The notes beneath the pieces were generated by a model. It saw nothing but the letters and a program-made list of their open reading frames with translations. It was not told the origin of the DNA and did not search any database. 64,000 nt of DNA, from IMG/VR virus record IMGVR_UViG_3300032931_001151, positions 124,001-188,000 of that record; one strand, given 5' to 3'. Within the stretch, counting starts at the first letter, position 1, and each line of letters begins with the position of its first letter. Positions 17,750-59,838 of this stretch are shown here, piece after piece. The position numbers and the translations under genes are program-made.

Positions 17750-17754
17750 AGAAT

Positions 17755-24324: not shown

Positions 24325-24353
24325 ATATAAAACTCCTTGTGACTATTTAATAT

Positions 24354-24361
24354 TATTTATA
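24354..24361 (-). promoter_or_regulatory. Late promoter
   Basis: TATAAATA upstream of 24324. Confidence 0.7.
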
Positions 24362-24374
24362 TAGATGATATGAA

Positions 24375-25985: not shown

Positions 25986-25987
25986 AT

Positions 25988-26596: not shown

Positions 26597-26613
26597 AGAA
26601 TCCTCCAAATATC

Positions 26614-26621
26614 TATTTATA
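26614..26621 (-). promoter_or_regulatory. Late promoter (gp2/portal)
   Basis: TATAAATA upstream of 26596. Confidence 0.7.
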
Positions 26622-26644
26622 ATAAATAACATTTAGGAGAAATT

Positions 26645-27133
26645 ATGAAAAAACCACACACCCATTTAAATGATAGAAAAGAAGGCTTTAAGCAAGATTA
26701 TTTCATTCCAAAAAATAAAGAAAAATACATAGGAACTTGGCCAATTACTTATCTTAGTTCGTGGGAACATAAATTCATGCGCTTTCTAGATATTAATGAA
26801 AATATACTTCAATGGGGAAGTGAAAGTATACAAATTAGATATATGTACTTTGACCCTATTAAAAAGACTCAAAGCGAGCACACCTACTTTCCAGACTTTA
26901 TTATAAGAATAAAGAAGTCCGAAACCGTCACGAGAACTCAAGTAATAGAAATAAAACCATTTAGAGAGACTAAAGCTCCTAAATTAGCCAAGAATAGAAA
27001 TACCAAGACAATGTTATACGAAGTGAAAACATATGCCAAGAATCAAGCAAAATGGGCCGCCGCTAAAGAATATTGTAGAGTTAGGGGTTGGGACTTTGTA
27101 GTGATAACGGAAAAGGATTTACCGAATTGTTAG
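26645..27133 (+). CDS. gp4: Head completion protein gp4 (TnsA-like nuclease fold)
   Basis: 'KYIG...YLSSWEHKFM', 'WGSE', 'YFPDF', 'IEIKP', 'NQAKWAAA', 'VITE'. Confidence 0.9.
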   Translation: MKKPHTHLNDRKEGFKQDYFIPKNKEKYIGTWPITYLSSWEHKFMRFLDINENILQWGSESIQIRYMYFDPIKKTQSEHTYFPDFIIRIKKSETVTRTQVIEIKPFRETKAPKLAKNRNTKTMLYEVKTYAKNQAKWAAAKEYCRVRGWDFVVITEKDLPNC

Positions 27134-27995: not shown

Positions 27996-28033
27996 TGGAA
28001 TTCCTTTTCAATAGGATATATCCAAAAACAAAA

Positions 28034-28066
28034 AAATAAAGGGAGCCAATTAGGCTCCCTTTATTT
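28034..28066 (-). terminator. Intrinsic terminator
   Basis: AAATAAAGGGAGCC/GGCTCCCTTTATTT stem. Confidence 0.8.
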
Positions 28067-28089
28067 AGAACAACTAACTTATCTTTAGA

Positions 28090-28662
28090 TTACTTACCTT
28101 TATTGAGGCCCTTATTTGGTTCGTTTAGAGGTCCGTTTACTATTTTTTCGTTACCGGCAAGGCCGAGTATATTACGAACTTTGCTACGGAAATCGGCATA
28201 AGGTTCTGCGCCTTCTTTCGTTTCGCCGGTTTCAACTTTGGTTCCTTTTGCTGCTCCACCCTTTGAGGCTTCTTCAGCGCCTTCACCACGTTTAACGCCA
28301 CCATCTTCACCAGCCGCTTTCTTTGAGCCAATATCAGCTTTCTTTGCTTCGGGTTGGGCATCTTTGACGCCTTCGCCACGAGCAACGGGTTTTACTCCGT
28401 CGCCGGTAGCAGACTTGTCGCCATGCTCGGTTTCATTTTTTACTTCTACTTGTTCGCCCGTTTTTGCTTTTGTTCCAGTTGAGCCGGCTACATCAGCGCC
28501 GCCTGCGGCACCAACTTCACGGCTTACTTCGGTTGGCTTTTTATCGCCATATCCTTTTATGGGTTTAATGCCTTGACCGGCGGGGAGAGTATTGTAAGCT
28601 TCACCTTCGGTTAGATTTTTATAGGCTTTTCTGATTTCGCTGAGAGTTACATCTTCTTGCAT
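28090..28662 (-). CDS. Low-complexity Gly/Lys/Glu/Ala late protein (probable abundant internal head protein)
   Basis: Own late promoter, strong SD and terminator; GC-richer codon usage similar to gp23. Confidence 0.55.
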   Translation of the reverse strand: MQEDVTLSEIRKAYKNLTEGEAYNTLPAGQGIKPIKGYGDKKPTEVSREVGAAGGADVAGSTGTKAKTGEQVEVKNETEHGDKSATGDGVKPVARGEGVKDAQPEAKKADIGSKKAAGEDGGVKRGEGAEEASKGGAAKGTKVETGETKEGAEPYADFRSKVRNILGLAGNEKIVNGPLNEPNKGLNKGK

Positions 28663-28700
28663 TTTATTTCTCCTTAAAGAAGTATTGTTGTTCTAAATAT

Positions 28701-28708
28701 TATTTATA
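28701..28708 (-). promoter_or_regulatory. Late promoter
   Basis: TATAAATA; others in this block at 29772, 33175 and 34343. Confidence 0.7.
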
Positions 28709-28717
28709 TGAGATCGG

Positions 28718-29752
28718 TCAAATTTCATTTGACTCTTTTATGGCTCGTAGAAATAATCTTAAATTTGTTTGATAATTTGAATTTTCTTCCATTTTTATAT
28801 ACTCTTTTATTCCAGCCGATTCAACCCCTTGCTCTCTTGGAACTGGATTATCTATGTCCATTTTTGCTTTAGAAGGAGTAAACTCGGATATGTTAGATCC
28901 TTCAACACCTTGCTCTCTTGGAACTGGATTATCCACGTCCATTTTTACTTTAGAAGGGGCGAATTCTTTTATTCCAGACCCTTCAACACCTTGCTCTCTA
29001 GCCACTTCCGTTGGAGCCTTAGAATTTCCATCTTTATACCAAATAAAATCTTTCTTCTCACCTTTTCTATATAAGTTTTTGCCTTCCGGCTTTATTTGTG
29101 CTATTACCGCAACTTCTTCAGCCTTAATAGACGGATTTGTTAAAGGTTGAGTTGACGGTTCATTAGGAGCTGCGCCCAAAGTTTTTCCATCGTTATTAGA
29201 CCCTACACTATGGACAACATCTGGAGATTTTTCTGAAGTACCATTAGTATACGGTTGCTCTGTTTTTTGAGCTTCATCTAAACTATATGTTTTTGATGGT
29301 GTTGGAATTATATTAGAATCTATATGTTTTGTTGAAGTAGATAAAATATCTTTGTTTTCATGCATAAATTTTTGTACCGATTTTATAGTAGATTTTAATA
29401 TACCCTCAGATAATGAATCAACCCAATTTTTTAATTTAGTTTGAATATCTATAAAAATTGCCTCACTTGAGTCTTCCGATTTAAACTCTCTTAGACTTAA
29501 CTCGCTATTTGAATTATCTAACATAGTTGCATTATACACTATTTTATCTTTATTTTGTTCAATTTGCTCTTTAAGCCCATCCACATATGATTTTAAGTCC
29601 TGATCGGAGTCTTTATTTGTCCAAGAATCTAGTCTTTTGTTTATTATTTGTATAGCTTCATCATAAGATTCCACTTCTTTCTCAAATAGAAGACTTTCAT
29701 CTACTTGAGGTGATGTAACTTGACTAAATGATTCCGGATCGGTAAGTGCCAT
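28718..29752 (-). CDS. Hypothetical late protein with three 27-aa repeats
   Basis: 'REQGVE' repeats at 81-bp spacing; late promoter at 29772. Confidence 0.6.
   Translation of the reverse strand: MALTDPESFSQVTSPQVDESLLFEKEVESYDEAIQIINKRLDSWTNKDSDQDLKSYVDGLKEQIEQNKDKIVYNATMLDNSNSELSLREFKSEDSSEAIFIDIQTKLKNWVDSLSEGILKSTIKSVQKFMHENKDILSTSTKHIDSNIIPTPSKTYSLDEAQKTEQPYTNGTSEKSPDVVHSVGSNNDGKTLGAAPNEPSTQPLTNPSIKAEEVAVIAQIKPEGKNLYRKGEKKDFIWYKDGNSKAPTEVAREQGVEGSGIKEFAPSKVKMDVDNPVPREQGVEGSNISEFTPSKAKMDIDNPVPREQGVESAGIKEYIKMEENSNYQTNLRLFLRAIKESNEI
28800..29010 (-). repeat. 81-bp imperfect tandem coding repeat (about 2.5 copies)
   Basis: TCAAC(C/A)CCTTGCTCTCT recurs at 28821, 28902 and 28983. Confidence 0.85.
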
Positions 29753-29760
29753 AAAAACTC

Positions 29761-30252
29761 CTATTTTACATTATTTATAGTAATCGTTCCATAATGACCG
29801 ATACAAATTGAATCGGCTTTTCCGTCGTGTGGAACTTTACATCTTGCCGATTTTAATAAGTTCATAGTCGGGTATGTATCTTTTACGAAATCTATTGCTC
29901 CACTTTTCTCGTCGTGTATGTATTTTTCACCCAATACATTCTTTTTCCATTTTTGTGGAGATATTTCCTTATATTCTATCCCAAGACACTCACATACCCC
30001 CTTAACCACTCCAACTCCTTCTCCGAAATTCCAAATGGACGTTCTTCCCTGGCCGGCAAATGCATGAACATGTTCCAAGTATACTAATTCAACTTTATTG
30101 GTTTTTAGATAATTAGATAGTTCTTTACCGTTTATTTTATTTTTTCCGTTTTCCTTTTCTTCTATTGGCATAATGATACAATCAATAAGATTTGTATCAT
30201 TAAAGATAGAAATTCCACCACTAAAACCAGGATCAATCCCGCATATAATCAT
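29761..30252 (-). CDS. ruvC: RuvC-like Holliday junction resolvase
   Basis: 'ICGIDPGFSGGI', 'YLEHVH', 'NFGEGVG', 'SPQKWKK', 'HDGKADSICI'. Confidence 0.85.
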   Translation of the reverse strand: MIICGIDPGFSGGISIFNDTNLIDCIIMPIEEKENGKNKINGKELSNYLKTNKVELVYLEHVHAFAGQGRTSIWNFGEGVGVVKGVCECLGIEYKEISPQKWKKNVLGEKYIHDEKSGAIDFVKDTYPTMNLLKSARCKVPHDGKADSICIGHYGTITINNVK

Positions 30253-30267
30253 TTGTTCCCCTAAAAG

Positions 30268-30299
30268 AATAAACCTTCCCGATTAAAGGAAGGTTTATT
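30268..30299 (-). terminator. Intrinsic terminator
   Basis: AATAAACCTTCC/GGAAGGTTTATT stem. Confidence 0.7.
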
Positions 30300-30318
30300 G
30301 TAGTACATTATAGTAAAC

Positions 30319-31275
30319 TTATAGTCCTATATTGGTTCCAATATTAGTTAAACCAATTCCACCTTTGCTCCCGCTTCTATCACCCTCTTCTGCACTCTTT
30401 TTTGCAGTTTCTTCTAATTCTTTTTTCATCATTTCTTCATATGCATTGGATAAGTTACCCATTAATTCGCCACTATTCTCATTATACTCACCTTCGCCAA
30501 CATATCCATATGATTCATCAATAGCGGGATTTCCACGACTCGTGCAAGCATCTTCGTAAACTGAATGAATCTCTTCCATTGAATTTCCGCACATTTCGCC
30601 CAATGATTGTAGTGCGGCACCACGATCTCCATTTTCATGTAGACCATTTGATTTTATGTGATTATATAATTCGTTCTTTTCCATTATACGTGATTCTTGT
30701 TTTGGCATCATTTCGGGTTCCAATTCGGCAGGCCCCCCACAACCTTGGGCAGATTCTACTGAATTCATTTCCATAGTCTCATATATTTTTCTCAAGTCGC
30801 TAACACTATCTTCAAATCTTTCACGGTGTATTTCAACTCCCTCGATATGCTCAACAATCATTTCCGTTGGATTTACTATCATTTTTCTTAGACCACAACG
30901 AAGTCCAAATTTAGCAGAATCTTCGTTTAATTTAATTGATTCAATAATCCACTCACGATTCTTTATATTATTAATACAAACCGTATCACCAACTTTAAAT
31001 TCATTATACGATTCTGCTATTGAGTCGCCGTTTCCAGTCATTGAGCCTCCAAATTTTTTCCCGGTAGATCCTTTTACGCTATGTTTTCCTTTTGCTTTCT
31101 CGTCATCTTCGTCGTCTTCGTCATCTTCATTTCGCAAATTATTACCTTTTAATATTTCCGAATCTTTTACCATATCGTCCTTATCACCTTTTAGTAAAGG
31201 ATCTTGAGTAAAAGGGATAGGACCCTTTTTTACTCCGGCTACTAAATATTCACCTTCTTTAAGTTCTGTTTCCAT
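30319..31275 (-). CDS. Acidic hypothetical protein with SH3/KOW-like domain
   Basis: 'FKVGDTVCI...EWIIESI'; very Glu/Asp-rich. Confidence 0.55.
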   Translation of the reverse strand: METELKEGEYLVAGVKKGPIPFTQDPLLKGDKDDMVKDSEILKGNNLRNEDDEDDEDDEKAKGKHSVKGSTGKKFGGSMTGNGDSIAESYNEFKVGDTVCINNIKNREWIIESIKLNEDSAKFGLRCGLRKMIVNPTEMIVEHIEGVEIHRERFEDSVSDLRKIYETMEMNSVESAQGCGGPAELEPEMMPKQESRIMEKNELYNHIKSNGLHENGDRGAALQSLGEMCGNSMEEIHSVYEDACTSRGNPAIDESYGYVGEGEYNENSGELMGNLSNAYEEMMKKELEETAKKSAEEGDRSGSKGGIGLTNIGTNIGL

Positions 31276-31285
31276 ATATTATCCT

Positions 31286-33133
31286 TTAGGGCTGTACATT
31301 TGAATTGGGTAGGGTGTCTTCTATTGGGGAAATTTCAACATTCGGATTAGGTGCATCTTCGTATGCTATTCCGAATCCCTTTCCGCCGATTCTTTCTTCT
31401 GGGTCAAATGATTTATTTTTTTGTTCGGCGGGAGTTCCGCCTTTTGGCAATTGTATGGCACCGGATTTGTTAAAATTCTTTAAACTACTCGGAGTTCTTT
31501 TTGGGGGAGCAAGAGTTGCTTCCGGATCAAAATTTTCTATACCTTTTTGTTTTGCTTTAAATTTAGTAGGATCAAACATTCTATCTACTTGCAAAAGAGG
31601 AGCAGATTCGCCAATGCTCTTTTCTATCTTTTCCCATTCTTTTCTTAAATTGTCAGTACCACGTTCATAATGGTCTTCCATTTCGTCAAATCCTTGCCTA
31701 TCTGATAATTCTATATTTTCCATATTAGTTTCGGCGGTTTCGCCGTTATCAGACTCAAGCAATACCGTATCGCCTTGTATCTCCATTATAACCCAATGTT
31801 CGTTCTCAAATATTACATCTTGTCCTTGTTTATAATTTCCTAGTGGAATATCTTCAATTTCTCCAGGTTCTTCTTTTTCATCTTCAAATCCTGGATCTCC
31901 GAAATATGCACCTGGGGAATGTTGCGTGAAATTATTATTTGTGTTAAATGCCAACTCAGATTCTTCCGATGGTGGAATTGATGTTTCTGGAGTAAGTAAC
32001 TCGGGATCTATTCTGTCAATATTAGACTCGGTAACGGTTGGATTTTCCATATCTCTAGTGTCTACTTGAGAGTCGCCCATTTCTTTAGTAGACGTGCTTA
32101 TTGATTGATCTTTTTGGACATTTACTTCATCATGGGTAACTAATTCTGCATCTTCTTTCATGTTAATTCCACATTCTTGTAACATATTGCACGCCTCGTC
32201 GCATACGGTTTGCATGTCTTGCTTCATAGAAGTGATATCGCCATGTCCAATATTAGCATTAAGTTGTTCAGAGATAGTATCTACCGCTCTTCTAATATCG
32301 GGAGCACTATAATGTGCATTTACTTCATTTTGTAAATAATCATTAAGATTAGATTGTATATCATTTATAGCAGACTTTAATTTTTCAAGTATTTGAGCCT
32401 CTTGCTCTTCATGATCATGTCCTTCATCGGACCCATATTGTCTTTCTTGTTCTTCCGCATTATTAAGTAGATTTAAGGCATTTTTAAGACCTTCTACGTT
32501 ATTTTTGAGGGTAGCAAGGGCTAAATGCTCTATTTTTTCGGCGGCAGGAGCATTTTGATCAACCATGCCCATTGGATCCATCGCTTGAGAGCCATCTTCG
32601 GCATCAAACGTTTCGCTTGGGGTTTTTATTTCTATATCACTACCGACTCCAATTTCATCCTCATCATCATCATTTCCCACCATCATATTATTTTCTTGCT
32701 CTTCTTCTTCTTCTTCGGGATAATCAAAATCGGCATCATTTGGATTCTGTATATTATGGAATTCTATTAATTTTTCTATGCCTTCCATAATTGCAGAAAA
32801 GTCATACTCTTCTCTTAACCCGGCTTTATAATCCATATATAATTCGGTGGCAATGCTACTTAATCTTTCAATAAAGTCTTTAGTATATTCTGGACCGTCA
32901 TTAATATAGCCCTCTTTTATTTCACCAATAGCCGATGAAATAATAGCATCATTAAGATTTGATCTCATTCTCTTGATTATAGTTTCACAAAATAATCTAT
33001 AGTTTGGGGATGTATATGCTTCGTTGGTTACTTCTGAGAATTCGGAGCCGCAATCGTTACAAACATATTCTTCACTCAACATAGTTGGTGTGAATTCATT
33101 TGTATTTCCGCAGCAAGGACATTTTTTATCCAT
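31286..33133 (-). CDS. Acidic hypothetical protein with N-terminal zinc ribbon and SH3/KOW-like domain
   Basis: 'CPCCG...YVCNDCG'; 'YKQGQDVIFENEHWVIMEI'; late promoter at 33175. Confidence 0.55.
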   Translation of the reverse strand: MDKKCPCCGNTNEFTPTMLSEEYVCNDCGSEFSEVTNEAYTSPNYRLFCETIIKRMRSNLNDAIISSAIGEIKEGYINDGPEYTKDFIERLSSIATELYMDYKAGLREEYDFSAIMEGIEKLIEFHNIQNPNDADFDYPEEEEEEQENNMMVGNDDDEDEIGVGSDIEIKTPSETFDAEDGSQAMDPMGMVDQNAPAAEKIEHLALATLKNNVEGLKNALNLLNNAEEQERQYGSDEGHDHEEQEAQILEKLKSAINDIQSNLNDYLQNEVNAHYSAPDIRRAVDTISEQLNANIGHGDITSMKQDMQTVCDEACNMLQECGINMKEDAELVTHDEVNVQKDQSISTSTKEMGDSQVDTRDMENPTVTESNIDRIDPELLTPETSIPPSEESELAFNTNNNFTQHSPGAYFGDPGFEDEKEEPGEIEDIPLGNYKQGQDVIFENEHWVIMEIQGDTVLLESDNGETAETNMENIELSDRQGFDEMEDHYERGTDNLRKEWEKIEKSIGESAPLLQVDRMFDPTKFKAKQKGIENFDPEATLAPPKRTPSSLKNFNKSGAIQLPKGGTPAEQKNKSFDPEERIGGKGFGIAYEDAPNPNVEISPIEDTLPNSNVQP

Positions 33134-33188
33134 TTTTTAAACTCCCTTTAATGAAGCGTAATAATCTATATTCTTATTTATAATGCTT

Positions 33189-34307
33189 TTAAAATCCTTC
33201 TTCGGTGCCACTAGCCCCTTCGGGTGGAGTTTCGGACGCCGTAGATGATTCGCCACCCGAAGCAGATTCCGCACCACTAGTATCTTCCGGATTGGTTGGT
33301 TCTGCACTAGCACCGGATTCGGCTGACGCACTTCCGCCCGCACCACCACTAGTTGAACTACTAATAACCGGTTTCAATCCTATTTCTTCGCTAACTTCTT
33401 TTTGTGCTTCTTGTTGTCTATCCGAAACCCTATTTTGATATAACTCTCTCAAGTACATCTTTTTTAATAATTCCATAATAAAAATATAGTTTATATCTTT
33501 TTCGTCTTCTTCTTCGTCGCCAAATACCGACAAATCCGGAAATAGTGCTCTAAATGCTAGTAGATATTTCTCTCCCATAACTTTGAAATGTATCGTTCTA
33601 ACTAGATCTAAAATGTTTGCCAATTTATACTTATAACAAAAACTTTTTAATTCGTCCGGGTTTGGTCTTTCAAAATCCATAAGACAAATAGCTTTGATTA
33701 TTTGCCCCGACATTTTAGCATTACCTAAGAACTCAACGGGGGTGGTTTCTTTTGGCCTCCATGTAATAAATCCAATATTTAAATCTTGGTCAGAGAATTT
33801 TTTAGTTATTTCGTCTGTAGCATTATTATTCTCGGGAAAATCGTCAACGCTTAAAACTATTAATATATTTGCTCTTTGAAATGATTTTTTCAAATTATTA
33901 ATAGAATCTTTAAAATTTTCTTCTTTATCCGTATAATTTTGCTTTTCGTCGGTGGCTAATATTAAGTCTTTAAAGTCCAAAGGGAACATTCGTAACCCGA
34001 AAATCTTCGCAGTAATGAATTCTTTTTCGTCGTTAGTTAAATTGTATTTAAACTTATCTAATATAGCAGATTGGGAAGTTTTTTCTTCGTTACATATTAG
34101 ACCAAACTCTACTTTAGGTGAAAACTTATCTTTATGTTGTCCAGTTTGAACTACCTCTTTTATAAATTTCTTAATCTTCTCATGTTCATCCCTTGTAATA
34201 GGATCATATGTTCCACTAAATAATACAACATCCCATTGATCATTAGTTTTGGGTGTGTTGTTATTTATTCCACTCGCATTTCCAAAAAAAGTTTTAAATG
34301 TTGACAT
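33189..34307 (-). CDS. Degenerate cytidylyltransferase-like (HIGH-class) protein
   Basis: 'VVLFSGTYDPITRDEH' resembles the G-x-F-D-P-x-x-x-G-H motif; Ser/Gly/Ala tail; late promoter at 34343. Confidence 0.45.
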   Translation of the reverse strand: MSTFKTFFGNASGINNNTPKTNDQWDVVLFSGTYDPITRDEHEKIKKFIKEVVQTGQHKDKFSPKVEFGLICNEEKTSQSAILDKFKYNLTNDEKEFITAKIFGLRMFPLDFKDLILATDEKQNYTDKEENFKDSINNLKKSFQRANILIVLSVDDFPENNNATDEITKKFSDQDLNIGFITWRPKETTPVEFLGNAKMSGQIIKAICLMDFERPNPDELKSFCYKYKLANILDLVRTIHFKVMGEKYLLAFRALFPDLSVFGDEEEDEKDINYIFIMELLKKMYLRELYQNRVSDRQQEAQKEVSEEIGLKPVISSSTSGGAGGSASAESGASAEPTNPEDTSGAESASGGESSTASETPPEGASGTEEGF

Positions 34308-34319
34308 TATTACCCCGTA

Positions 34320-34676
34320 TTATTTTATATTGCTCAACAAAGTATTTATAAGTTCACGGTCTTTTCTTTTTAAAAATGGGGTCTTTACTAGTTCCCCGCC
34401 AACAACTATAAACTTTTGTCTTGTTAGTAATATATCATTATTTTCCCCTAGACCATAGAAATTCAAAAATTTACTAATTAATATAGCATTGTACACGTCA
34501 TCTTTTGAATTCTTTATAGAATAAATTAATATATCTATAAGCGGAGTTAAATCTTTATCAATATTTTTGAATAATTCCAATAACTCGGTTATCTTACTTT
34601 TAGTTAGAGAATACTCCTTTGCTTCTATATCATCTAACTTTAATTTCAGTTTCTCTTTTATTGAAGATTCTTCCAT
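34320..34676 (-). CDS. Hypothetical protein
   Basis: 118-aa ORF with SD GAGGA and TGGTATAAT upstream. Confidence 0.55.
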   Translation of the reverse strand: MEESSIKEKLKLKLDDIEAKEYSLTKSKITELLELFKNIDKDLTPLIDILIYSIKNSKDDVYNAILISKFLNFYGLGENNDILLTRQKFIVVGGELVKTPFLKRKDRELINTLLSNIK

Positions 34677-42102: not shown

Positions 42103-42558
42103 TTAAAGGTCTTCGGCAATAGAAAATGATAATTTTTGAAGAGATACTTTATCTTGATTTTTAATTAAGGCGTCTTTAACCTTACTTTGATGTTTCTCTT
42201 TGTACATAACTTGAATAAATGCTCTTACTATTATAGTAGTACAGTAGCTAAAAGCATCGGTTGGTTTTCCCTCTCTCGTTTTTCTAGTTGGATCGTAATT
42301 ATGACTATATTTTAGAAGATGTAATAGAGCCGTCCCTTCCATATCAGATTTATACGTATAGTCTTTAAAATTATGGGCACTTGATACTCTAGATACATGT
42401 AACATGAATAATTCACCAAGTCTATCGGTGGCTTTACCAGTTTTAGTATATTTTATCAATTCATTAGAATATTCGTCTTTATCAATATAATACCGTGATT
42501 CGTCAGAGAACGTTCTTCTTTTTCTTAGAATAATTCTCTTCTTTTCTTTTTTGGACAT
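42103..42558 (-). CDS. gp55: Late transcription sigma factor gp55
   Basis: 'NFKDYTYKSDM', 'KYSHNYDP', 'AFSYCTTIIVRAF...KEK'; synteny 55-47-46. Confidence 0.88.
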   Translation of the reverse strand: MSKKEKKRIILRKRRTFSDESRYYIDKDEYSNELIKYTKTGKATDRLGELFMLHVSRVSSAHNFKDYTYKSDMEGTALLHLLKYSHNYDPTRKTREGKPTDAFSYCTTIIVRAFIQVMYKEKHQSKVKDALIKNQDKVSLQKLSFSIAEDL

Positions 42559-44773: not shown

Positions 44774-47650
44774 ATGTATTCATCTATCTACTTTAATAGG
44801 TCTAAATCTATAATCCATCTATGGGAATATATTGATGGAGTAAAAACCCATAATACATTTGAGGCTCCACTCTATTTTTACAAACAAGATAAAGATGGTC
44901 CTTTTACTTCAATATATGGCGAAAAACTAAAAAAAGTTGAATGTAAAACATATAACGAATATCAAGAGAAGATTGAAAATCTCAAAAAGATGGGTAAAAA
45001 GTTATATGAATCCGACGTTTCAATAGATTCTAAATTTATTATTGATCATTACATAGGACAAGATTTACAACCACCAAAATTCAATATACACTTTATTGAT
45101 ATTGAGGTTCATTCTGAGGATGGATTTCCTTCACCCGACGAAGCAAAACATCCTATTACGGTTATAACCGTGTGGTCAACAAAGCACGAAAAATTTTTCA
45201 TTTTTGCTGAAAAAGATTTTGAAGTTAATTTTCTTCGTGAAGGTGAGAGTTGTCAAAAAATAATTTGCTCCGATGAGGCTGGCAGATTAAGGGAATTCGT
45301 TAATTTTATCAATGAAGAGCATCCGGATGTGATTTCCGGGTGGAACTCGGATGGATTTGATATACCATATATTATTCGTAGAACAGAACAATTATGTGGA
45401 GAACGATGGGTAAAAAAGTTAAGTCCTATTGGGGTAGTTAGAGAAGTGGAAATGACCGTAGGAAAAGGTGCAAACAAAAAGAAAGAAAAAAGATTCATAA
45501 TTGGGGGAATTAATTGTCTTGATCTATTATGGGTTTATAGAAATTATACTTTCTCGGATAGAGAAAACTATAGATTGGGATATATAGCCGAACTTGAGAT
45601 AGGGGAAACGAAGCTTGAGTATGACGGATCTTTGTCGGATCTATATAAAGACTGGCAAAAGTATATGGAATATAACGTTCAAGATACTCGTCTTTTAAAA
45701 TTAATTGAACAAAAACTTGGATATCTTGGTTTATTATTTACCTTTTGTTATGGATGCCGTGTTCCATTTGATCAATATAGTAAAACTACAAGAGTCCTTG
45801 ATGGGGCTTTTATCTCGGAACTATCAAGAGAAGGCATAATTCTCCCCGATGTAAATAGAGACATCACGGACGTTCAATATCCTGGTGGGTTCGTGAAGGA
45901 TCCGGATAGAGGTGTTCACGATTGGATTATGTCGTTTGACGCAACCTCGCTTTATCCATCAATTATGATGAATTGGAATATAAGCCCCGAAACTAAATAT
46001 GCCGTATTAAATAAGAAATTTATTGATGCTACCGTTGAAGCATATCGTGGGGTTTCGCTTAACGATGATTTAAAATTTAATCTTCCGGGAAAAGCACAAA
46101 ATAAAACAATTTATGAAATAGTATCATATGTAAGACAAAAAGGATTGAAAGAGGTAAACAAAGAAGACGGTGGAATACATGGTTTATTTAATGACGAACC
46201 TATAAAGCACATAACAAATGCTTTAGCTAATCTTCCATATGAAAACATTGAGGTATATTTTAATAATGAATTAACTAACATAGTTAATGTCGTAAAGATT
46301 ATAAAAGATAAGAACTTATGTCTATCTGGAAATGGGATTTTATATACTCAAGATAAGATCGGGGTTATTCCAAGATTCGTTAAAATATGGTTTGATAAGA
46401 GAAAAGAATATAAAAAGAAAATGCTTGAAGCCGAAACTCTAGGTGATAAAGATAAGAAGAAATACTACGATTTACTCCAATTAAATTTTAAGATTCTAAT
46501 TAATAGCGTATATGGTTATTTAGGTACTTGCCATTCAAGGTTCTACGATTTTGATAATGCTGTGGCGGTTACGATAAATGGTCAAAATATTATTAAAGAT
46601 GCATCATATTCTATTGAAAACTTCTTTCTTAATAAATGGTCAACCCATTTCATGGGAGAAAAGTTAAAAGCAAGTAACTTTGAAGGTGTTATTACATATA
46701 ACGATACGGATAGCGTATATGTAAATGGTGGAAGAATTATTAATAGTATTAAAGCAATAGACATGAACTCTTATGACATGAATAAAATAAAGAACTTTAT
46801 AATATTTGGAAAGCCATATTCCAATGAAGATTTGTACGATATCCACGAAGAAAAAGGTAAGAAGAATCTAAAAATAAAAGAACAATTTAAAAAATTAGAA
46901 GATAACGCTAAAAGTATTCAAAATATTATTCAAAAACTTATAACGGACTCCATGATACATTTAACGACTATAAAATTTAATTGTAAAGAAAATAAAATCT
47001 TCTTCAAGAGAGAGGCGGTTGCAAGGCGAGCTGGGTTCTTACAACGAAAGAGATATGTTGCATGGGTTCTTAATAATGAAGGAGTTGAATGTGATAAGAT
47101 GAAATGTGTTGGGGTTGAAATGGTTAGATCTTCAACCCCATTATTCATTCAAGATGTTCTTGAAGATGTTGTTTTTGATATGTTGAAGTATAAATCTCTT
47201 GAAAAAAGCGATGAAAAGGTAAAAGATATTAGAGATAAATTTCTTAAGGCTCCTATAGAACAAATCTCATTTCCAAGAGGTATTCATGGGATGGACAAAT
47301 ATGAAGAAGGCGGTGAAAGTGAAAATAAATCCCAACCCATTCATGTTAGAGCGTCTATGTTATATAATGATATGATAAGTTCAAATCCTATACTTAAAAA
47401 TAAATATAATTTAATTAAGAATGATTCAAAGTTAAAATTCATATATATGAAACCATCGGCTATCTTTAGATCAAATGTTATTGCTTTCGTCGATAAATGG
47501 CCTAAAGAGTTTAATCTTGAAGCCAATATTGATAAAGATTTACAATTTGAAAAGACTTTTATTATGCCTATGACACAGTTTTATGAGTTGTTTGGCTGGA
47601 CTATGCCAAATTTAAAAAATGTAGATGTTTCTGATCTATTCGTTTTTTAA
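44774..47650 (+). CDS. gp43: Family B DNA polymerase gp43
   Basis: Exo 'DIEV', 'GWNSDGFDIPY', 'YNVQD'; pol 'DATSLYPS', 'KILINSVYG', 'YNDTDS'; C-terminal clamp-binding-like 'VSDLF'. Confidence 0.97.
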   Translation: MYSSIYFNRSKSIIHLWEYIDGVKTHNTFEAPLYFYKQDKDGPFTSIYGEKLKKVECKTYNEYQEKIENLKKMGKKLYESDVSIDSKFIIDHYIGQDLQPPKFNIHFIDIEVHSEDGFPSPDEAKHPITVITVWSTKHEKFFIFAEKDFEVNFLREGESCQKIICSDEAGRLREFVNFINEEHPDVISGWNSDGFDIPYIIRRTEQLCGERWVKKLSPIGVVREVEMTVGKGANKKKEKRFIIGGINCLDLLWVYRNYTFSDRENYRLGYIAELEIGETKLEYDGSLSDLYKDWQKYMEYNVQDTRLLKLIEQKLGYLGLLFTFCYGCRVPFDQYSKTTRVLDGAFISELSREGIILPDVNRDITDVQYPGGFVKDPDRGVHDWIMSFDATSLYPSIMMNWNISPETKYAVLNKKFIDATVEAYRGVSLNDDLKFNLPGKAQNKTIYEIVSYVRQKGLKEVNKEDGGIHGLFNDEPIKHITNALANLPYENIEVYFNNELTNIVNVVKIIKDKNLCLSGNGILYTQDKIGVIPRFVKIWFDKRKEYKKKMLEAETLGDKDKKKYYDLLQLNFKILINSVYGYLGTCHSRFYDFDNAVAVTINGQNIIKDASYSIENFFLNKWSTHFMGEKLKASNFEGVITYNDTDSVYVNGGRIINSIKAIDMNSYDMNKIKNFIIFGKPYSNEDLYDIHEEKGKKNLKIKEQFKKLEDNAKSIQNIIQKLITDSMIHLTTIKFNCKENKIFFKREAVARRAGFLQRKRYVAWVLNNEGVECDKMKCVGVEMVRSSTPLFIQDVLEDVVFDMLKYKSLEKSDEKVKDIRDKFLKAPIEQISFPRGIHGMDKYEEGGESENKSQPIHVRASMLYNDMISSNPILKNKYNLIKNDSKLKFIYMKPSAIFRSNVIAFVDKWPKEFNLEANIDKDLQFEKTFIMPMTQFYELFGWTMPNLKNVDVSDLFVF

Positions 47651-50405: not shown

Positions 50406-51833
50406 GTGTCGGACAACAATATTCAATATTATATTTTAAACGGGCTTCTATCAATAGAAGATTATGCGTCTAAATATATTGATAAAATAGATGCCTCGCA
50501 TTTTGCAATAGAAATGCGACCAATTATAAAGGGGATTCAGAAGTTCCATTTAAAGAACTTGAAAATCCCCTCAATTGGCATCCTTATTGATAGAGTTATT
50601 CCAGTAATTACGAAAAATGATCCAGAGCAACAACAAAAATGTGAAGATATAATTCAATCCGCAATGGCTATTGAGTTTAAGAAAAATGACTTTTATGATT
50701 GGTTAAAAACGGAAACTAATGAGTTTATCAAGAAACAACGAGTTATTGATGCTTTGATGAAAGCCGTAGATATTGTAAATAACGGTGACGTGGACGAAGC
50801 CAAAAAACTAATGGATGAGGCTTATCAAATTACATTTGATGATAATCTCGGATTAGATTATTTTGGAAATTTAGAAGATAGAATGAAAAGACTTAAAACT
50901 GGAGCAAACATAATTAATACTGGATTAGAAATACTTAATAATATGATTGGTGGTGGTTGGAGAAATAAGTCATTAATAGTGTTTGGTGCTGGAACTAACG
51001 TAGGTAAAACTCTAATTTTAAGTGATATATCATTTAAGTTAATAAAGCAAGGTCTTAACGGATTATATGTAACTCTTGAAATTTATGAAGATAGTTTGGC
51101 GAATAGAATAGATGCTAATTTATCTAATATTGAATTAAGTGAGTTACCTTCAAATGTTGATTATTTAATGCAAAAAATATTAGAAGAAAAGAAAAACGCC
51201 GAAGCTTCGGGTAATCCGTTTGGAAGATTTATTATCAAAGAATTCCCACCTGGCATTAATTGTAATACTATTCTTTCTACCATTAGAGAATTAAATCTTA
51301 AACAAGGATTTAAACCGGATTTCCTTGTGATAGATTATATTGGATTATTGGCTCCAAATGGAAAAACTGCCGATAATTCTTTTACGGATTTAAAGAAAGT
51401 ATCGGAACAAGTTAGAACTCTATCGTCAATGTTGAATATTCCCGTATTTACCGCCCAACAAACAAATCGTGATAGTTACGGGTTGAGTGAAATCGGACTT
51501 GAATCCACCTCGGAATCAATGGGTATACCTTTTACCGCCGATATTATGATTATGTGTTCACGGACGAAAGATATGGAAGAAGAAAATCAAATGTATTGGT
51601 ATATAGCCAAGAGTAGATTTAGTAAAAATAACGTTGGATTCTTTGTAAATGTTGAATATCCATATATGAGAATATCTGAAACTAACGTATCTATCCAAAA
51701 TATATCCCAAAATGTATCTACAAAACCCAAGGCTGAAAAAAGAAAAGTTGAAGTAAACTTTTCTTCTCATTCCCCAAATATTAGCGGAGGCATAGATGAA
51801 ACCGAAGAATGGACAAAGACAATTAACTTATGA
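50406..51833 (+). CDS. gp41: Replicative DnaB-like helicase gp41
   Basis: 'AGTNVGKT', 'YVTLE', 'IIKEFP', 'VIDYIGL', 'TAQQTNR', 'SESMG', 'KSRF'. Confidence 0.93.
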   Translation: MSDNNIQYYILNGLLSIEDYASKYIDKIDASHFAIEMRPIIKGIQKFHLKNLKIPSIGILIDRVIPVITKNDPEQQQKCEDIIQSAMAIEFKKNDFYDWLKTETNEFIKKQRVIDALMKAVDIVNNGDVDEAKKLMDEAYQITFDDNLGLDYFGNLEDRMKRLKTGANIINTGLEILNNMIGGGWRNKSLIVFGAGTNVGKTLILSDISFKLIKQGLNGLYVTLEIYEDSLANRIDANLSNIELSELPSNVDYLMQKILEEKKNAEASGNPFGRFIIKEFPPGINCNTILSTIRELNLKQGFKPDFLVIDYIGLLAPNGKTADNSFTDLKKVSEQVRTLSSMLNIPVFTAQQTNRDSYGLSEIGLESTSESMGIPFTADIMIMCSRTKDMEEENQMYWYIAKSRFSKNNVGFFVNVEYPYMRISETNVSIQNISQNVSTKPKAEKRKVEVNFSSHSPNISGGIDETEEWTKTINL

Positions 51834-52086
51834 CGAAATAGCTCGTAAGTACGATATGACCCCCGCCAAAGCACATTCGGTGGTCAAACAAGCATACAAT
51901 AAAATGGTCAAAGCATTGATAGAAAGAGAAAAAATAAATATTTTTGATGCAATTTTAGCACTTCGAGAATATTTTAATATGTCAGAGCAAGAAGCATATG
52001 ATAAACTAACCGACGAACATAAAGAATTATTAAAAGAATATGCTATAAAAGAGTTTGATATAAGATCAAAGAAAGGCAAGGCGTAA
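51796..52086 (+). CDS. Late transcription co-activator gp33-like with N-terminal sigma4-like HTH
   Basis: C-terminal half 'INIFDAILALREYFNMSEQEAYDKLTDEHKELLKEYA' is gp33-like; T4 synteny 33-59-32; SD GGAGG. Confidence 0.55.
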   Translation: MKPKNGQRQLTYDEIARKYDMTPAKAHSVVKQAYNKMVKALIEREKINIFDAILALREYFNMSEQEAYDKLTDEHKELLKEYAIKEFDIRSKKGKA

Positions 52087-52087: not shown

Positions 52088-52678
52088 GTGATTCCGCACG
52101 ATCTATTTAAATTATGCATGGGGTGTTTACATAGATCGTGTGGCACTACTATACAAGATTTTAACGAGTCTAAACATTATAATTTTTTTAATATGCTACT
52201 TAAATATTTTAAAAATGAATTGAAGTTTAATAGTATACAAATAAGACAATATGTAACGGTATTAGCCAAAATACATGAAAATAGTTTTGACCCTTGGAAG
52301 TTAGATTCTCAAGAATACTTTAATGATTTTAAGGCTTGGTATAAAGTCAACTCCTCTAAAGATGCTTACTTAAATAATGTTAAAGAAAGCGTTAAGACCA
52401 TAATAAAATTTTGTAAAACGAAAAAAATAAAAAAGTTAGAAGACTATGTAAAGAATTGGGGTGTAACACATTATATCTCCGGAGTGCTTAACGAAAACGT
52501 CGCATATGCAATAGGTTTACATGAACTTACTCTATCTAAACCTGAAAAATTTATGGTAAAAAGATTTTTGAAGAATGTTCCAATGATAAAAGAGAGACTT
52601 GAGAGAGAAGGTCGCTTAAAAGTATTATTAGAAGATGAAATAAAACAAGCCAAAGAAATGTTGATTTGGATTTCTTGA
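52088..52678 (+). CDS. Helicase loader gp59-like
   Basis: Size and position between the gp33-like gene and gp32; weak sequence support. Confidence 0.45.
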   Translation: MIPHDLFKLCMGCLHRSCGTTIQDFNESKHYNFFNMLLKYFKNELKFNSIQIRQYVTVLAKIHENSFDPWKLDSQEYFNDFKAWYKVNSSKDAYLNNVKESVKTIIKFCKTKKIKKLEDYVKNWGVTHYISGVLNENVAYAIGLHELTLSKPEKFMVKRFLKNVPMIKERLEREGRLKVLLEDEIKQAKEMLIWIS

Positions 52679-52778: not shown

Positions 52779-53756
52779 ATGTCAAAATTCGACACATTAT
52801 CCCAAAACACTAAATTTGAAGAACTTCGCCAGAAACTTCAAAAGCAACGCACCGATGCTGAAAATAAAAAGAACGGTGGGACTACCCGAGATGATACTTG
52901 GAAGTTTCTTCCCGAGCTTCCAGCCGATAAGCCAAGTGCAAAATACACACTAAGAATTCTACCAAATCGCCACGATATGGAATCGTCATATCCTTGGATT
53001 GATGGTTATTTCCATATGTTCCGTAGAAGCGATGGTAAGTTCATCTATACTATGTGTCCTACTACGGTGGACGAAAAAGCCCCATGTCCAATTTGTGAAA
53101 AAGCTAAAAAACTATTCGCAACTAAAGATAAAGCAGACGAGGATGCCGCTTTTAAACTCTATAGAAAACAACGCTTCTTCGTTAACGTTTACGTAAAAGC
53201 GGATCCGAGAGTTGGCGAAACCAATCAAGCAGGTAAAGTCGTTGTATACGAATTTGGTAAGAAATTATTTGATAAGTTCTCGGATGCTATTCTTGAGCAA
53301 CAACTTGAAATTGTTAATACTTTAAACGGACACGATTTCATGCTTGTACTTAAGAAACAAGGCGAATATACAAACTATGATAGTTCGCTATTCGTTGCTA
53401 AAGAAAGTGTAGTCCATGAAGAGGAAGAAGAGTTGAATAAGATTTATGATTCGATAATTAATCTTAAAGAGAAAGTTATAGGTCGTGGACCGCAAACTTA
53501 CGAGAAACTTCAAGAGATGCTTACTGGTCAACCCGCTAATGGGGCTTCAGTATCAAATGCTCCTAAAGTTTCAATTACGAGTGATTCGGCTAAAGGTGGA
53601 GCAAAGGTAATTGAAAAGCCATCAGAAGGGGTAGTTCCCGACGAAGCCGCATTCAATGAAGGTCTTGGTGCTAAACCAAAGGTAGAAACGAAAGTAAAAG
53701 CCGATGTCGCTAAAAAGAGCGACGATGACTTTGACTTTGATTTTGATGAAAAGTGA
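52779..53756 (+). CDS. gp32: Single-stranded DNA-binding protein gp32
   Basis: 'LRILP', 'CPTT...CPIC', 'GKVVVYEFGKKLFDK', 'NYDSS'; acidic/aromatic C-terminal tail. Confidence 0.93.
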   Translation: MSKFDTLSQNTKFEELRQKLQKQRTDAENKKNGGTTRDDTWKFLPELPADKPSAKYTLRILPNRHDMESSYPWIDGYFHMFRRSDGKFIYTMCPTTVDEKAPCPICEKAKKLFATKDKADEDAAFKLYRKQRFFVNVYVKADPRVGETNQAGKVVVYEFGKKLFDKFSDAILEQQLEIVNTLNGHDFMLVLKKQGEYTNYDSSLFVAKESVVHEEEEELNKIYDSIINLKEKVIGRGPQTYEKLQEMLTGQPANGASVSNAPKVSITSDSAKGGAKVIEKPSEGVVPDEAAFNEGLGAKPKVETKVKADVAKKSDDDFDFDFDEK

Positions 53757-59064: not shown

Positions 59065-59838
59065 ATGAGTGAATTTAATATACAAGCGACTCTTACGGAT
59101 AAACAAGCAAAGGACTTTTTTACTCCATTAAACGATATTTTGAGAAATTGTGGCCAAAAAGTTGTAATTAGATTTTTCAAAGAGAAGAAAATAATTATTA
59201 AGACTATTACTGAGCAACGAGATTTAATTCAATTTGTTAACTATAATGATAGTATTTCTTCTCTTTTCAATATAGAGAATGATTATAGAACTGGAATTTA
59301 TGACTTAAGTGAATTTGTTAATCTTTTCAAGATATTTGACACGGGATTAGATTTTAAGTATCACGCAAATGAGAAAAAAATAGAGTTAAGCAATAATGTT
59401 AACGGTGAGGATCAATCCCTTCAATACTATATTTGCGACGAAACTGTAGTCCCAAAGCCACCCGAAGGCATTGATTTTTCGAAGATTACATGGTCCACTT
59501 CATTTGTTTGGAATATCTCTAAATACGATACTCTTTTTAATGCAATGAAGAGTCTTAAATATCCCAATATAATTATAGTAGGAAAGAAGGACGAAAAGCA
59601 TCTAACGGTTTCAATTACCGAAAGTGATATCAAAACTACTACTTTTAAATCAAAGATAAATCTTGATGCTCCTATAGTATCAAGCTTCAATATAATTGTT
59701 GATAAGGCTAAATTCATCAACATAGTATCAAGTAGTATAAAAGAGTTTAATATTAATATATGTGAAAGATTGCTACATTTCAAGGGGAAGTCTGACATTT
59801 GTGATGTAGAATATATGCTTTCACCTTTGAAGAAATGA
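59065..59838 (+). CDS. gp45: Sliding clamp gp45
   Basis: 'GIYDLSEFVNL' motif; immediately upstream of the clamp loader. Confidence 0.75.
   Translation: MSEFNIQATLTDKQAKDFFTPLNDILRNCGQKVVIRFFKEKKIIIKTITEQRDLIQFVNYNDSISSLFNIENDYRTGIYDLSEFVNLFKIFDTGLDFKYHANEKKIELSNNVNGEDQSLQYYICDETVVPKPPEGIDFSKITWSTSFVWNISKYDTLFNAMKSLKYPNIIIVGKKDEKHLTVSITESDIKTTTFKSKINLDAPIVSSFNIIVDKAKFINIVSSSIKEFNINICERLLHFKGKSDICDVEYMLSPLKK

What the first reader, a model, noticed from the sequence alone, without database searches (positions are those of the whole stretch)
51796..52086. gp33-like co-activator carrying a sigma-70 region-4-like HTH
Seen: N-terminal LTYDEIARKYDMTPAKAHSVVKQAYNKM fits the sigma4 pattern (T-x-x-EIA...R-V...A-x-x-K-L/M), followed by a gp33-like segment, in the T4 33-59-32 order. 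Known: gp55 retains only sigma domain 2, and gp33 binds the beta flap in place of sigma4 without binding DNA. Inference: gp55 plus this protein may form a split sigma factor with DNA-binding ability, a possible evolutionary intermediate of T4 late transcription.
Basis: partly seen in the sequence, partly recalled or inferred. Interest (0 to 1): 0.6.

Follow-up and report, generated by a model that had tools for sequence, protein, structure and literature searches.

The report
gp33 co-activator with sigma-4-type HTH
This small gene of an uncultured T4-like phage encodes the counterpart of T4's late-transcription co-activator gp33, but unlike every described gp33 it carries at its start a helix-turn-helix resembling the DNA-reading end of bacterial sigma factors, the first sequence-level link between gp33 and sigma.

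Summary
The ORF at 51796..52086 (+, 96 aa) is real and reads as quoted. It lies in the order UvsX, gp41, this ORF, gp59-like, gp32. It has a GGAGG ribosome site and 36 relative clusters in metagenomes.

- **gp33 core.** Residues about 26-93 adopt the gp33 fold. T4 gp33 (3TBI) is the top PDB match by two methods, and profile comparison with 12 classical gp33s gives P 3.4e-5.
- **Sigma-type HTH.** Residues 10-37 form a sigma-70 region-4.2-type helix-turn-helix. The window protein alone is below threshold, but six relatives pass Pfam's Sigma70_r4 cut-off, and the family profile matches E. coli sigma region 4 at P 2.5e-5. Classical gp33s show nothing (0.7).
- **Conservation.** The HTH is the best-conserved part of the family.
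- **Companion machinery.** The phage has a gp55-like sigma-2 factor, a clamp, a clamp loader and T4-type TATAAATA late promoters.
- **No upstream element.** The 26 intergenic promoter copies show no conserved upstream motif, so sequence-specific -35-like reading is not supported.
- **Missing tail.** This copy lacks the clamp-binding tail that many relatives carry.

This is a new variant of a known kind. DNA binding and the evolutionary direction remain untested.

The parts
51796..52086 (+). gene for the 96-aa gp33-like co-activator (P0001)
   Evidence: ORF found. There are 26 close homologues and 36 clusters at 50% identity. The AF2 model has pLDDT 86.
51786..51790 (+). GGAGG ribosome-binding site, 5 nt before the ATG
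   Evidence: Read directly from the sequence.
51823..51906 (+). residues 10-37: sigma-70 region-4.2-type helix-turn-helix (model helices 12-18 and 23-43)
   Evidence: Pfam Sigma70_r4 in 12 of 34 relatives, six above the cut-off, always at profile positions about 19-49. hhalign against E. coli sigma region 4 gives P 2.5e-5. SigL region 4 (3hug_A) superposes at rmsd 1.4 A over 42 residues, Z 3.9. The nearest ESM Atlas clusters by features carry Sigma70_r4.
51871..52074 (+). residues 26-93: gp33 fold (expected beta-flap-binding core)
   Evidence: 3tbi_A is the top match: VIA Z 7.3, rmsd 2.4, 68 of 71 residues aligned. Foldseek also ranks it first, prob 0.97, TM by target 0.71. The Atlas shape match is a PF16805 cluster, TM 0.57/0.61. 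hhalign against classical gp33s gives P 3.4e-5 over residues 32-87.
42103..42558 (-). gp55-like late sigma factor (sigma region 2 only), 151 aa, ending ...KLSFSIAEDL
   Evidence: phrog_234 E 2.7e-21. phmmer with T4 gp55 gives E 8.6e-5. Sequence.
52088..52678 (+). gp59-like helicase loader, 196 aa, GTG start
   Evidence: No Pfam or PHROG hit. The AF2 model has pLDDT 88.8. It matches T4 gp59 1c1k_A at VIA Z 9.3 with 171 of 217 residues aligned; the next hit is Z 5.1.
52779..53756 (+). gp32 single-stranded DNA-binding protein
   Evidence: Pfam gp32 E 4.6e-25; phrog_224 E 1.5e-34.
50406..51833 (+). gp41-like DnaB helicase; its end overlaps the start of the gp33-like gene
   Evidence: phrog_19 E 5e-84; DnaB_C E 2.2e-20.
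59065..59838 (+). gp45-like sliding clamp, followed by gp44 (59849-60748) and gp62 (61532-61966)
   Evidence: phrog_223 E 2.4e-11 and phrog_225 E 2.7e-18. Gp44_lid and AAA domains.
44774..47650 (+). gp43-like DNA polymerase; its C-terminus ...VDVSDLFVF shows this phage's likely clamp-binding motif
   Evidence: DNA_pol_B E 8.7e-39. C-terminal sequence.
6533..34350 (-). region holding twelve T4-type late promoters (TATAAATA) upstream of minus-strand structural genes; first motif bases at 6540, 10408, 10445, 13382, 17749, 22566, 24361, 26621, 28708, 29779, 33182 and 34350
   Evidence: TATAAATA is the most enriched 8-mer upstream of genes; 25 of the 40 genome copies lie in sense within 120 nt of a start. 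No upstream motif was found.

Best explanation
The ORF encodes the gp33 (late-transcription co-activator) orthologue of a deep-branching, uncultured T4-like phage.

**Core (inferred function).** Residues about 26-93 fold like T4 gp33. By homology they should clamp onto the flap-tip helix of the host RNA polymerase beta subunit, the site that sigma region 4 normally holds.

**HTH.** Residues 10-37 form a helix-turn-helix of the sigma-70 region-4.2 type. Its recognition helix (23-43) runs straight into the first helix of the gp33 fold.

**Two-piece late sigma.** Together with the gp55-like sigma-2-only factor (42103-42558), the protein makes a two-piece late sigma for TATAAATA promoters.

**Role of the HTH (inferred).** These promoters have no -35-like element, and the -35-reading residues of sigma-70 are not kept. 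The HTH therefore most likely contacts the backbone of upstream DNA without reading sequence, extending the K75-type contact known for T4 gp33, or else plays a structural role.

**Tail.** This copy lacks the hydrophobic clamp-binding tail that many relatives carry. Clamp tethering here would rest on gp55 or be dispensed with.

What is shown: the fold, the family relations, the gene order, the companion genes and the promoter type. What is inferred: flap binding, DNA contact and the role in late transcription.
For: **gp33 identity**
- T4 gp33 (3tbi_A) is the top hit of 350,542 chains by Foldseek (prob 0.97, TM by target 0.71, rmsd 2.0 over 61; E only 0.89).
- It is also top of 48,161 chains by VIA-align: Z 7.3, 68 of 71 residues aligned, next hit Z 5.0.
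- The ESM Atlas shape search returns a PF16805 cluster.
- hhalign of the family against 12 classical gp33s gives P 3.4e-5.
- Two relatives hit PF16805 at about 1e-3, and P0047 has Sigma70_r4 (residues 8-36, 24.7 bits) and PF16805 (29-68) in one 88-aa chain.
- No PF16805 or phrog_254 match was found anywhere in the 214-kb record.
- The same order, gp41, this gene, gp59-like, gp32, is seen in loci L016, L018 (one extra 99-aa ORF), L024 and L025.

**Sigma-4 HTH**
- Supported.
- Control: none of 12 classical gp33s hits Sigma70_r4 at E <= 0.1, and hhalign of that set against sigma region 4 gives 0.7.
- The HTH is the most conserved region (2.39 bits per column against 2.13 for the core). N35 is invariant; K36, K70 and L71 are nearly so.
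- The HTH region is net positive in most members (+3 here). The window protein has pI 9.2, against 4.5 for T4 gp33.

**Late system**
- gp55-like factor; clamp and loader; TATAAATA promoters.

**Flap binding**
- Co-fold with E. coli beta 831-1057 gave 'weak support': score 0.43 against a best control of 0.00.
- That mark was reached by 58 of 80 solved complexes and 2 of 110 mismatched pairs. At 0.60 or under it was reached by only 7 of those 80 and by both mismatches that passed.
- The runs agree in at least 93% of contacts, and the partner's pLDDT is at least 73.

**T4 background**
- gp33 binds the flap tip, and K75 touches upstream DNA (PMC7892883).
Against: - The window protein itself passes no curated family threshold: Sigma70_r4 13.4 bits against 24.1, and no PF16805 hit.
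- BLASTP against cyanophage and pelagiphage gp33 finds nothing.
- Z 7.3 is middling for a small helical protein, and hhalign probabilities are only 72% (gp33) and 50% (sigma region 4).
- Some relatives score as well on Cro/C1-type HTH_3 as on Sigma70_r4 (P0049), so the HTH class is not unambiguous.
- Only the HTH of region 4.2 is matched, never region 4.1.
- The co-fold used the E. coli flap because the host is unknown. A like complex (3TBI) is solved, so that pass may reflect likeness only.
- No upstream promoter element was found, and nothing here measures DNA binding.
Confidence: 0.7

Rival explanations
1. True split sigma with sequence reading. The HTH recognises a specific upstream element at late promoters, as sigma region 4 reads the -35 box, so that gp55-like plus this protein act as a bipartite promoter-specificity factor.
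For: The HTH is of sigma-4.2 type and is the best-conserved part of the family. It is net positive. T4 gp33 sits against upstream DNA (PMC7892883).
Against: The 26 intergenic TATAAATA promoters show at most 0.28 bit at any position from -70 to -5, and no 4-6-mer is enriched in -55..-8 after correction. The positions aligned to sigma-70 R584, E585, R586, R588 and Q589 are P, A, K, H, S. The analysis covers this one genome and would miss a very degenerate or variably spaced element.
Confidence: 0.1
2. An ordinary gp33 whose HTH does not touch DNA. The N-terminal helices serve only folding or protein contacts, for example with the beta' zinc-binding domain, gp55 or the flap. The protein would then work exactly like T4 gp33: a repressor of basal transcription and an adaptor.
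For: T4 gp33 does not bind DNA on its own (PMC2988020, PMC7892883). No upstream motif was found. The C-terminal half of the recognition helix is built into the gp33 core.
Against: Strong conservation of the exposed N-terminal half of the HTH. Positive charge of that region and pI 9.2, against 4.5 for T4 gp33. This copy has lost the clamp-binding tail, which in T4 is essential for activation (PMC7892883), so some other tether would be needed.
Confidence: 0.2
3. Not a gp33 at all: an unrelated small HTH regulator, or a DsbA-like DNA-binding protein, that merely occupies the slot before gp59.
For: The window protein has no PF16805 or phrog_254 hit. In T4 the DNA-binding protein DsbA lies next to gene 33. 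Many small viral Sigma70_r4-only proteins exist.
Against: T4 gp33 is the top structural match by two PDB searches, and the ESM Atlas shape search returns a PF16805 (gp33-family) cluster. Profile comparison gives P 3.4e-5. There is no Phage_DsbA hit, and phmmer with T4 DsbA gives E 1.6. No PF16805 or phrog_254 match was found elsewhere in the genome, although gp55, the clamp and TATAAATA promoters are present.
Confidence: 0.05

Closest known systems
T4 gp33, late-transcription co-activator (Pfam PF16805 Trans_coact, phrog_254; PDB 3TBI)
   Same: Same gene slot before gp59 and gp32. Same helical fold over residues 26-93. Same companion set: a gp55-like factor, a clamp, and TATAAATA promoters without a -35 box. 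A lysine at or next to the position of T4 K75 (K70, 30 of 34 relatives) is conserved. Many relatives end in an acidic linker plus an LF motif like the clamp-binding tail.
   Different: No hit to the curated gp33 models. A conserved N-terminal sigma-4.2-type HTH stands where classical gp33s are variable or truncated. The protein is basic (pI 9.2) where T4 gp33 is acidic (pI 4.5). This copy has no clamp-binding tail.
Sigma-70 family region 4.2 (Pfam PF04545 Sigma70_r4)
   Same: The HTH sequence signature, in relatives LTYEEIG..L.IS.QQVHKIEKEALNKL against RpoD [27 protein letters not shown]. Six relatives exceed Pfam's cut-off. The expected site on RNA polymerase, the flap tip, is shared.
   Different: Only the two HTH helices match. 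There is no region 4.1 and no regions 2 or 3 in the chain. The -35-reading residues are not kept. The cognate promoters lack a -35 element. The helices after the HTH are gp33-like, not sigma-like.
Cyanophage and pelagiphage gp33 (e.g. S-IOM18 YP_008126521, Mosig QOI69109)
   Same: Small size (72-83 aa), the order 33-59-32, and short basic tails of the type KGVLPL that resemble the GKGLSLK or GKGMLI tails of this protein's closest kin.
   Different: They hit PF16805 strongly and Sigma70_r4 not at all. There is no detectable pairwise similarity to the window protein.
T4 DsbA (PF11126), the small DNA-binding protein encoded just upstream of gene 33
   Same: A small DNA-binding-type protein associated with gene 33 and late promoters in T4.
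   Different: No sequence similarity. No separate dsbA-like gene lies upstream here; the gp41 gene abuts directly.

Membership tests
gp33 / Trans_coact (PF16805, phrog_254) | Match to the curated family model above its cut-off | tested here: not met
   The window protein has no hit. Two of 34 relatives hit at E 1.4e-3 and 2.7e-3, below the 25-bit cut-off. P0036 hits phrog_254 at E 0.0097.
gp33 / Trans_coact (PF16805, phrog_254) | gp33 helical fold as in PDB 3TBI | tested here: met
   3tbi_A is ranked first by Foldseek (prob 0.97, TM by target 0.71) and by VIA-align (Z 7.3, 68 of 71 aligned, next Z 5.0). The Atlas shape match is a PF16805 cluster. The model is predicted, not solved.
gp33 / Trans_coact (PF16805, phrog_254) | Detectable profile-level homology to classical gp33s | tested here: met
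   hhalign of A2 against A3: P 3.4e-5, probability 72%, with window residues 32-87 aligned to T4 gp33 38-92.
gp33 / Trans_coact (PF16805, phrog_254) | Gene order 33-59-32 in a T4-like replication module | tested here: met
   gp41, this ORF, gp59-like (Z 9.3 to 1c1k_A), gp32. The same order is seen in loci L016, L018 (one extra 99-aa ORF), L024 and L025.
gp33 / Trans_coact (PF16805, phrog_254) | Binds the beta-flap tip helix of RNA polymerase | tested here: inconclusive
   The co-fold with E. coli beta 831-1057 gave weak support: 0.43 against a best control of 0.00. The mark was reached by 58 of 80 solved complexes and 2 of 110 mismatches, but at 0.60 or under by only 7 of the 80 and by both passing mismatches. 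This needs a binding assay.
gp33 / Trans_coact (PF16805, phrog_254) | C-terminal hydrophobic sliding-clamp-binding motif | tested here: not met
   The window protein ends ...DIRSKKGKA. It is 7 nt shorter at this point than its relative in L024. Many relatives end in ...SDLFGE, TSLFE, LDALFE or EDLFR, like the polymerase tail SDLFVF.
gp33 / Trans_coact (PF16805, phrog_254) | Works with gp55 and a clamp at TATAAATA-type late promoters | tested here: met
   The companion genes and the promoter motif are present. Function itself was not tested.
Sigma-70 region 4 (PF04545) | Match to the curated model above its cut-off | tested here: inconclusive
   The window protein scores 13.4 bits against 24.1. 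Six relatives score 24.7-29.0 bits. hhalign of the family against E. coli region 4 gives P 2.5e-5.
Sigma-70 region 4 (PF04545) | Both sub-regions 4.1 and 4.2 present | tested here: not met
   All matches cover profile positions about 16-49 of 50, that is the HTH of region 4.2 only. Residues 1-9 are disordered in the model.
Sigma-70 region 4 (PF04545) | Residues that read the -35 box, and a -35 element at cognate promoters | tested here: not met
   The positions aligned to RpoD R584, E585, R586, R588 and Q589 are P, A, K, H, S. No upstream motif was found at 26 late promoters.
Sigma-70 region 4 (PF04545) | Part of one polypeptide with sigma region 2 | tested here: not met
   This is a stand-alone 96-aa protein. 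The sigma-2-like gp55 homologue is a separate gene about 9 kb away on the other strand.
T4 DsbA (PF11126, phrog_639) | Match to the family model | tested here: not met
   No hit in Pfam or PHROGs. phmmer with T4 DsbA gives E 1.6.

The most novel reading that the evidence does not exclude
gp33 descends from sigma region 4. This family would be a surviving intermediate that still carries the region-4.2 HTH fused to the flap-clamping helices. The T4 late 'split sigma' (gp55 plus gp33) would then be a genuinely split sigma-70-family factor rather than a sigma-2 relative plus an unrelated mimic. In this lineage the HTH would still bind upstream DNA and partly replace the clamp tether.
Probability: 0.3. 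Interest if true: 0.75.

Novelty: new variant of a known kind. Interest (0 to 1): 0.6.

Why it matters
The T4 literature treats gp33 as a functional mimic of sigma region 4. [quoted passage not shown]

A conserved family that is gp33 by fold and gene position, yet carries a sigma-4.2-type HTH by sequence, makes the origin of the split late sigma directly testable.

It also offers a natural gp33 variant that is basic and lacks the clamp-binding tail. With it one can ask whether a DNA contact can stand in for clamp tethering.

The family is known only from metagenomes. None of four members tried was found among 50,697 deposited phage records.

Tried and rejected
- BLASTP of the window protein against S-IOM18 and Mosig gp33 gave no alignment.
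- tblastn of the window protein and of three distant relatives against 50,697 phage records gave no match.
- PF16805 and phrog_254 searches over the whole 214-kb record found nothing. phmmer with T4 gp33 and DsbA against all ORFs found nothing significant.
- A profile search of PDB sequences with A1 or A2 did not find 3TBI. It gave only weak, though numerous, sigma region-4.2 hits.
- Frameshift idea: I considered that the sequence HDLFKL just after the stop, in the +1 frame, was a frameshifted clamp-binding tail. I rejected this because M..x.L[FY]K.C is the conserved N-terminus of the gp59-like protein in five phages. The short tail is also a natural variant shared with P0002.
- DsbA-fusion idea: rejected, since there is no similarity.
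- hhalign of the 196-aa protein against three gp59s was not significant. Its gp59 identity rests on the fold alone.
- The search for related loci with A2 failed for lack of a conserved stretch. With A1 it gave five IMG/VR loci, which I did not analyse further.
- The gp33 structure paper by Twist et al. 2011 is not held.
- An apparent 'TP.K' similarity to the cyanophage gp33 N-terminus is about 10 residues out of register with the hhalign alignment. I did not pursue it.
Full report
**1. The observation**

The ORF 51796..52086 (+) encodes 96 residues, and the quoted stretch is residues 10-37. A GGAGG sits 5 nt before the ATG, and the ORF overlaps the end of the upstream helicase gene.

The window is bases 124001-188000 of a 214.2-kb virus record with 33% G+C. 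Its gp32 and DNA polymerase are only about 30% identical to the nearest deposited phages, which are cyanophages and a pelagiphage. It is therefore a deep-branching, uncultured T4-like phage.

The neighbouring genes, in order:

| Window coordinates | Gene | Evidence |
|---|---|---|
| 49127-50350 | UvsX | |
| 50406-51833 | gp41-like helicase | |
| 51796-52086 | the ORF | |
| 52088-52678 | 196-aa ORF | see below |
| 52779-53756 | gp32 | |

The 196-aa protein has no family hit. Its predicted structure (pLDDT 88.8) matches T4 gp59 at Z 9.3 with 171 of 217 residues aligned, and the next hit is Z 5.1. The T4 order 33-59-32 therefore holds. The same order is found in four other metagenomic loci that carry relatives of the ORF.

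**2. Is it gp33?**

The curated models say no. The window protein does not hit PF16805 or phrog_254, nothing in the whole record does, and BLASTP against cyanophage and pelagiphage gp33 is blank.

Structure and profiles say yes:
- An AlphaFold2 model built on 13 homologues (pLDDT 86; helices 12-18, 23-43, 49-60, 64-69, 73-87) has the T4 gp33 crystal structure 3TBI as its best match in the PDB by two independent searches.
- Foldseek gives prob 0.97, TM by target 0.71 and rmsd 2.0 A over 61 columns, although E is only 0.89.
- VIA-align over 48,161 chains gives Z 7.3, rmsd 2.4 A and 68 of 71 residues aligned, with model 26-93 on gp33 32-102. The next hit is Z 5.0.
- A shape search of the ESM Atlas returns a cluster in which 99% of members carry PF16805 (TM 0.57/0.61).
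- An exhaustive profile search found 36 clusters at 50% identity. Their 34-sequence alignment (A2) compared with 12 classical gp33s from T4 to pelagiphage (A3) gives hhalign P 3.4e-5, with window residues 32-87 on T4 gp33 38-92.
- Two relatives hit PF16805 at about 1e-3.

These lines agree with each other and with the gene position. I therefore take the protein to be the gp33 orthologue of this lineage.

**3. Is the N-terminus sigma-4-like?**

On the window protein alone the hits are sub-threshold: Sigma70_r4 E 0.058 and Sigma70_r4_2 E 0.038, alongside other HTH families. Across the family the picture is much stronger:
- 12 of 34 members hit Sigma70_r4, the best at 7.4e-7.
- Six members exceed Pfam's 24.1-bit cut-off: P0047, P0048, P0049, P0053, P0054 and P0064. 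The match always falls at residues about 8-37 and profile positions about 19-49 of 50, which is the HTH of region 4.2.
- P0047 carries Sigma70_r4 (residues 8-36) and PF16805 (29-68) in one 88-aa chain. The recognition helix of the HTH is thus the first helix of the gp33 domain.
- hhalign of A2 against region 4 of E. coli RpoD, RpoS, RpoH and FliA gives P 2.5e-5. As a control, the classical gp33 alignment against the same target gives 0.7.
- None of the 12 classical gp33s hits Sigma70_r4 at E <= 0.1.
- About two-thirds of the 57 weak PDB sequence hits of the family profile are region 4.2 of RpoD, SigA or RpoH.
- Model residues 7-49 superpose on SigL region 4 at 1.4 A over 42 residues.
- The nearest ESM Atlas clusters by language-model features are small viral proteins that carry Sigma70_r4.

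Caveats remain. Only the two HTH helices match and region 4.1 never does. One relative (P0049) scores slightly better on the Cro/C1-type HTH_3 model than on Sigma70_r4.

**4. Is the HTH functional, and does it read DNA?**

Signs that the HTH is functional:
- It is the best-conserved part of the family, at 2.39 bits per column against 2.13 for the gp33 core. N35 is invariant, and K36, K70 and L71 are nearly so.
- It is net positive in most members, and +3 here.
- The whole window protein has pI 9.2, against 4.5 for T4 gp33.
- In T4, gp33 lies against upstream DNA and K75 touches a backbone phosphate (PMC7892883). The conserved K70-L71 sits at or next to that position in the alignment.

Signs against sequence reading:
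- TATAAATA, the T4 late-promoter box, is the most enriched 8-mer upstream of genes in this genome. Of 40 copies, 25 lie in sense within 120 nt of a start.
- The 26 intergenic copies show no conserved position from -70 to -5 (at most 0.28 bit) and no enriched 4-6-mer in -55..-8.
- The positions aligned to the -35-reading residues of sigma-70 are P, A, K, H, S. Which sigma-70 residues read the -35 box is taken from my own knowledge.

I conclude that sequence-specific reading is unlikely. Non-specific DNA contact is plausible, but nothing here measures it.

**5. The rest of the late system**
- A gp55-like factor of 151 aa lies at 42103-42558 on the minus strand (phrog_234 E 2.7e-21).
- The clamp, gp44, gp62 and RegA follow in T4 order at 59065-62410.
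- The polymerase ends in ...SDLFVF.
- Many relatives of the ORF end in an acidic linker plus SDLFGE, TSLFE, LDALFE or EDLFR. This resembles the polymerase tail and the LDFLL of T4 gp33.
- The window protein, like P0002, stops at ...SKKGKA. Its closest kin carry short tails such as GKGILV or GKGLSLK, resembling the cyanophage KGVLPL.
- In T4 the clamp-binding motif of gp33 is essential for activation (PMC7892883). How this copy would activate is therefore open.

**6. Flap binding**

A co-fold with E. coli beta 831-1057 gave 'weak support'. The score was 0.43 against a best control of 0.00. That mark was reached by 58 of 80 solved complexes and 2 of 110 mismatched pairs. At 0.60 or under, it was reached by only 7 of the 80 and by both mismatches that passed. 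The runs agree in at least 93% of contacts, and the partner's pLDDT is at least 73.

Because 3TBI is a solved complex of the same kind, this result shows likeness rather than binding.

**7. Comparison with what is known**

The standard review calls gp33 a sigma-4 mimic and gp55 plus gp33 a split sigma. It also states that there is no discernible sequence similarity between gp33 and sigma proteins, and that the N-terminal third of gp33 is highly variable (PMC2988020). [quoted passage not shown] One comparative-genomics paper states in passing that gp33 contains an HTH that binds the flap as sigma does (PMC7824862).

In five literature searches I found no paper that describes a gp33 with region-4.2 sequence similarity. 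None of four family members tried by tblastn was found in the deposited phage collection.

**8. Verdict**

It is unsupported on sequence-specific DNA reading. It remains open on the evolutionary direction, since loss of the HTH in T4 and cyanophages is as possible as gain in this clade.

This is a new variant of a known kind. Its interest is moderate to high for phage transcription, because it turns a long-standing analogy into a testable homology.

Noticed in passing
window 52088-52678 (+): A 196-aa protein with no Pfam or PHROG hit. Its predicted fold matches T4 gp59 helicase loader (1c1k_A) at Z 9.3 with 171 of 217 residues aligned, so it is a very divergent gp59. Its N-terminus M..x.L[FY]K.C is conserved in five phages.
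   Followed up: yes
window 6540, 10408, 10445, 13382, 17749, 22566, 24361, 26621, 28708, 29779, 33182, 34350, 49175 (- strand); 56166, 61962 (+ strand): T4-type late promoter boxes TATAAATA lie 8-80 nt upstream of gene starts. It is the most enriched 8-mer upstream of genes in the whole 214-kb record, and no upstream element accompanies it.
   Followed up: yes
window 53827-56152 (+) and 42683-43726 (+): Two nucleotide-sugar epimerase/dehydratase-like genes (phrog_540) and a glycosyltransferase (phrog_7162) sit inside the replication module. They may serve DNA or cell-surface sugar modification. Relatives L024 and L025 carry the same epimerase pair after gp32.
   Followed up: no
window 59065-62410 (+): The T4 order 45-44-62-regA is kept: clamp (phrog_223), gp44, gp62 (phrog_225) and RegA (PF01818). 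An extra 254-aa ORF (60756-61520), with no family hit, lies between gp44 and gp62.
   Followed up: partly
window 47501-47650 (+): The DNA polymerase ends in ...NVDVSDLFVF, the likely clamp-binding motif of this phage. The gp55-like protein ends in ...KLSFSIAEDL.
   Followed up: partly
ESM Atlas: There are many viral clusters of 60-72-aa proteins made of little more than a Sigma70_r4 HTH. They resemble the N-terminal half of this protein, and their relation to gp33-like proteins is unknown.
   Followed up: no
L025 (JGI contig Ga0621872_00102): A 93%-identical copy of the protein, with the same neighbours, lies on a contig of 385,866 bp, far larger than this 214-kb record. IMG/VR labels the window's record 'provirus', which is odd for a T4-like phage.
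   Followed up: no
window 47652-49094 (-): A 480-aa lysine- and glutamate-rich ORF with no family hit. It is transcribed from a TATAAATA box at 49175, between the polymerase and UvsX genes.
   Followed up: no
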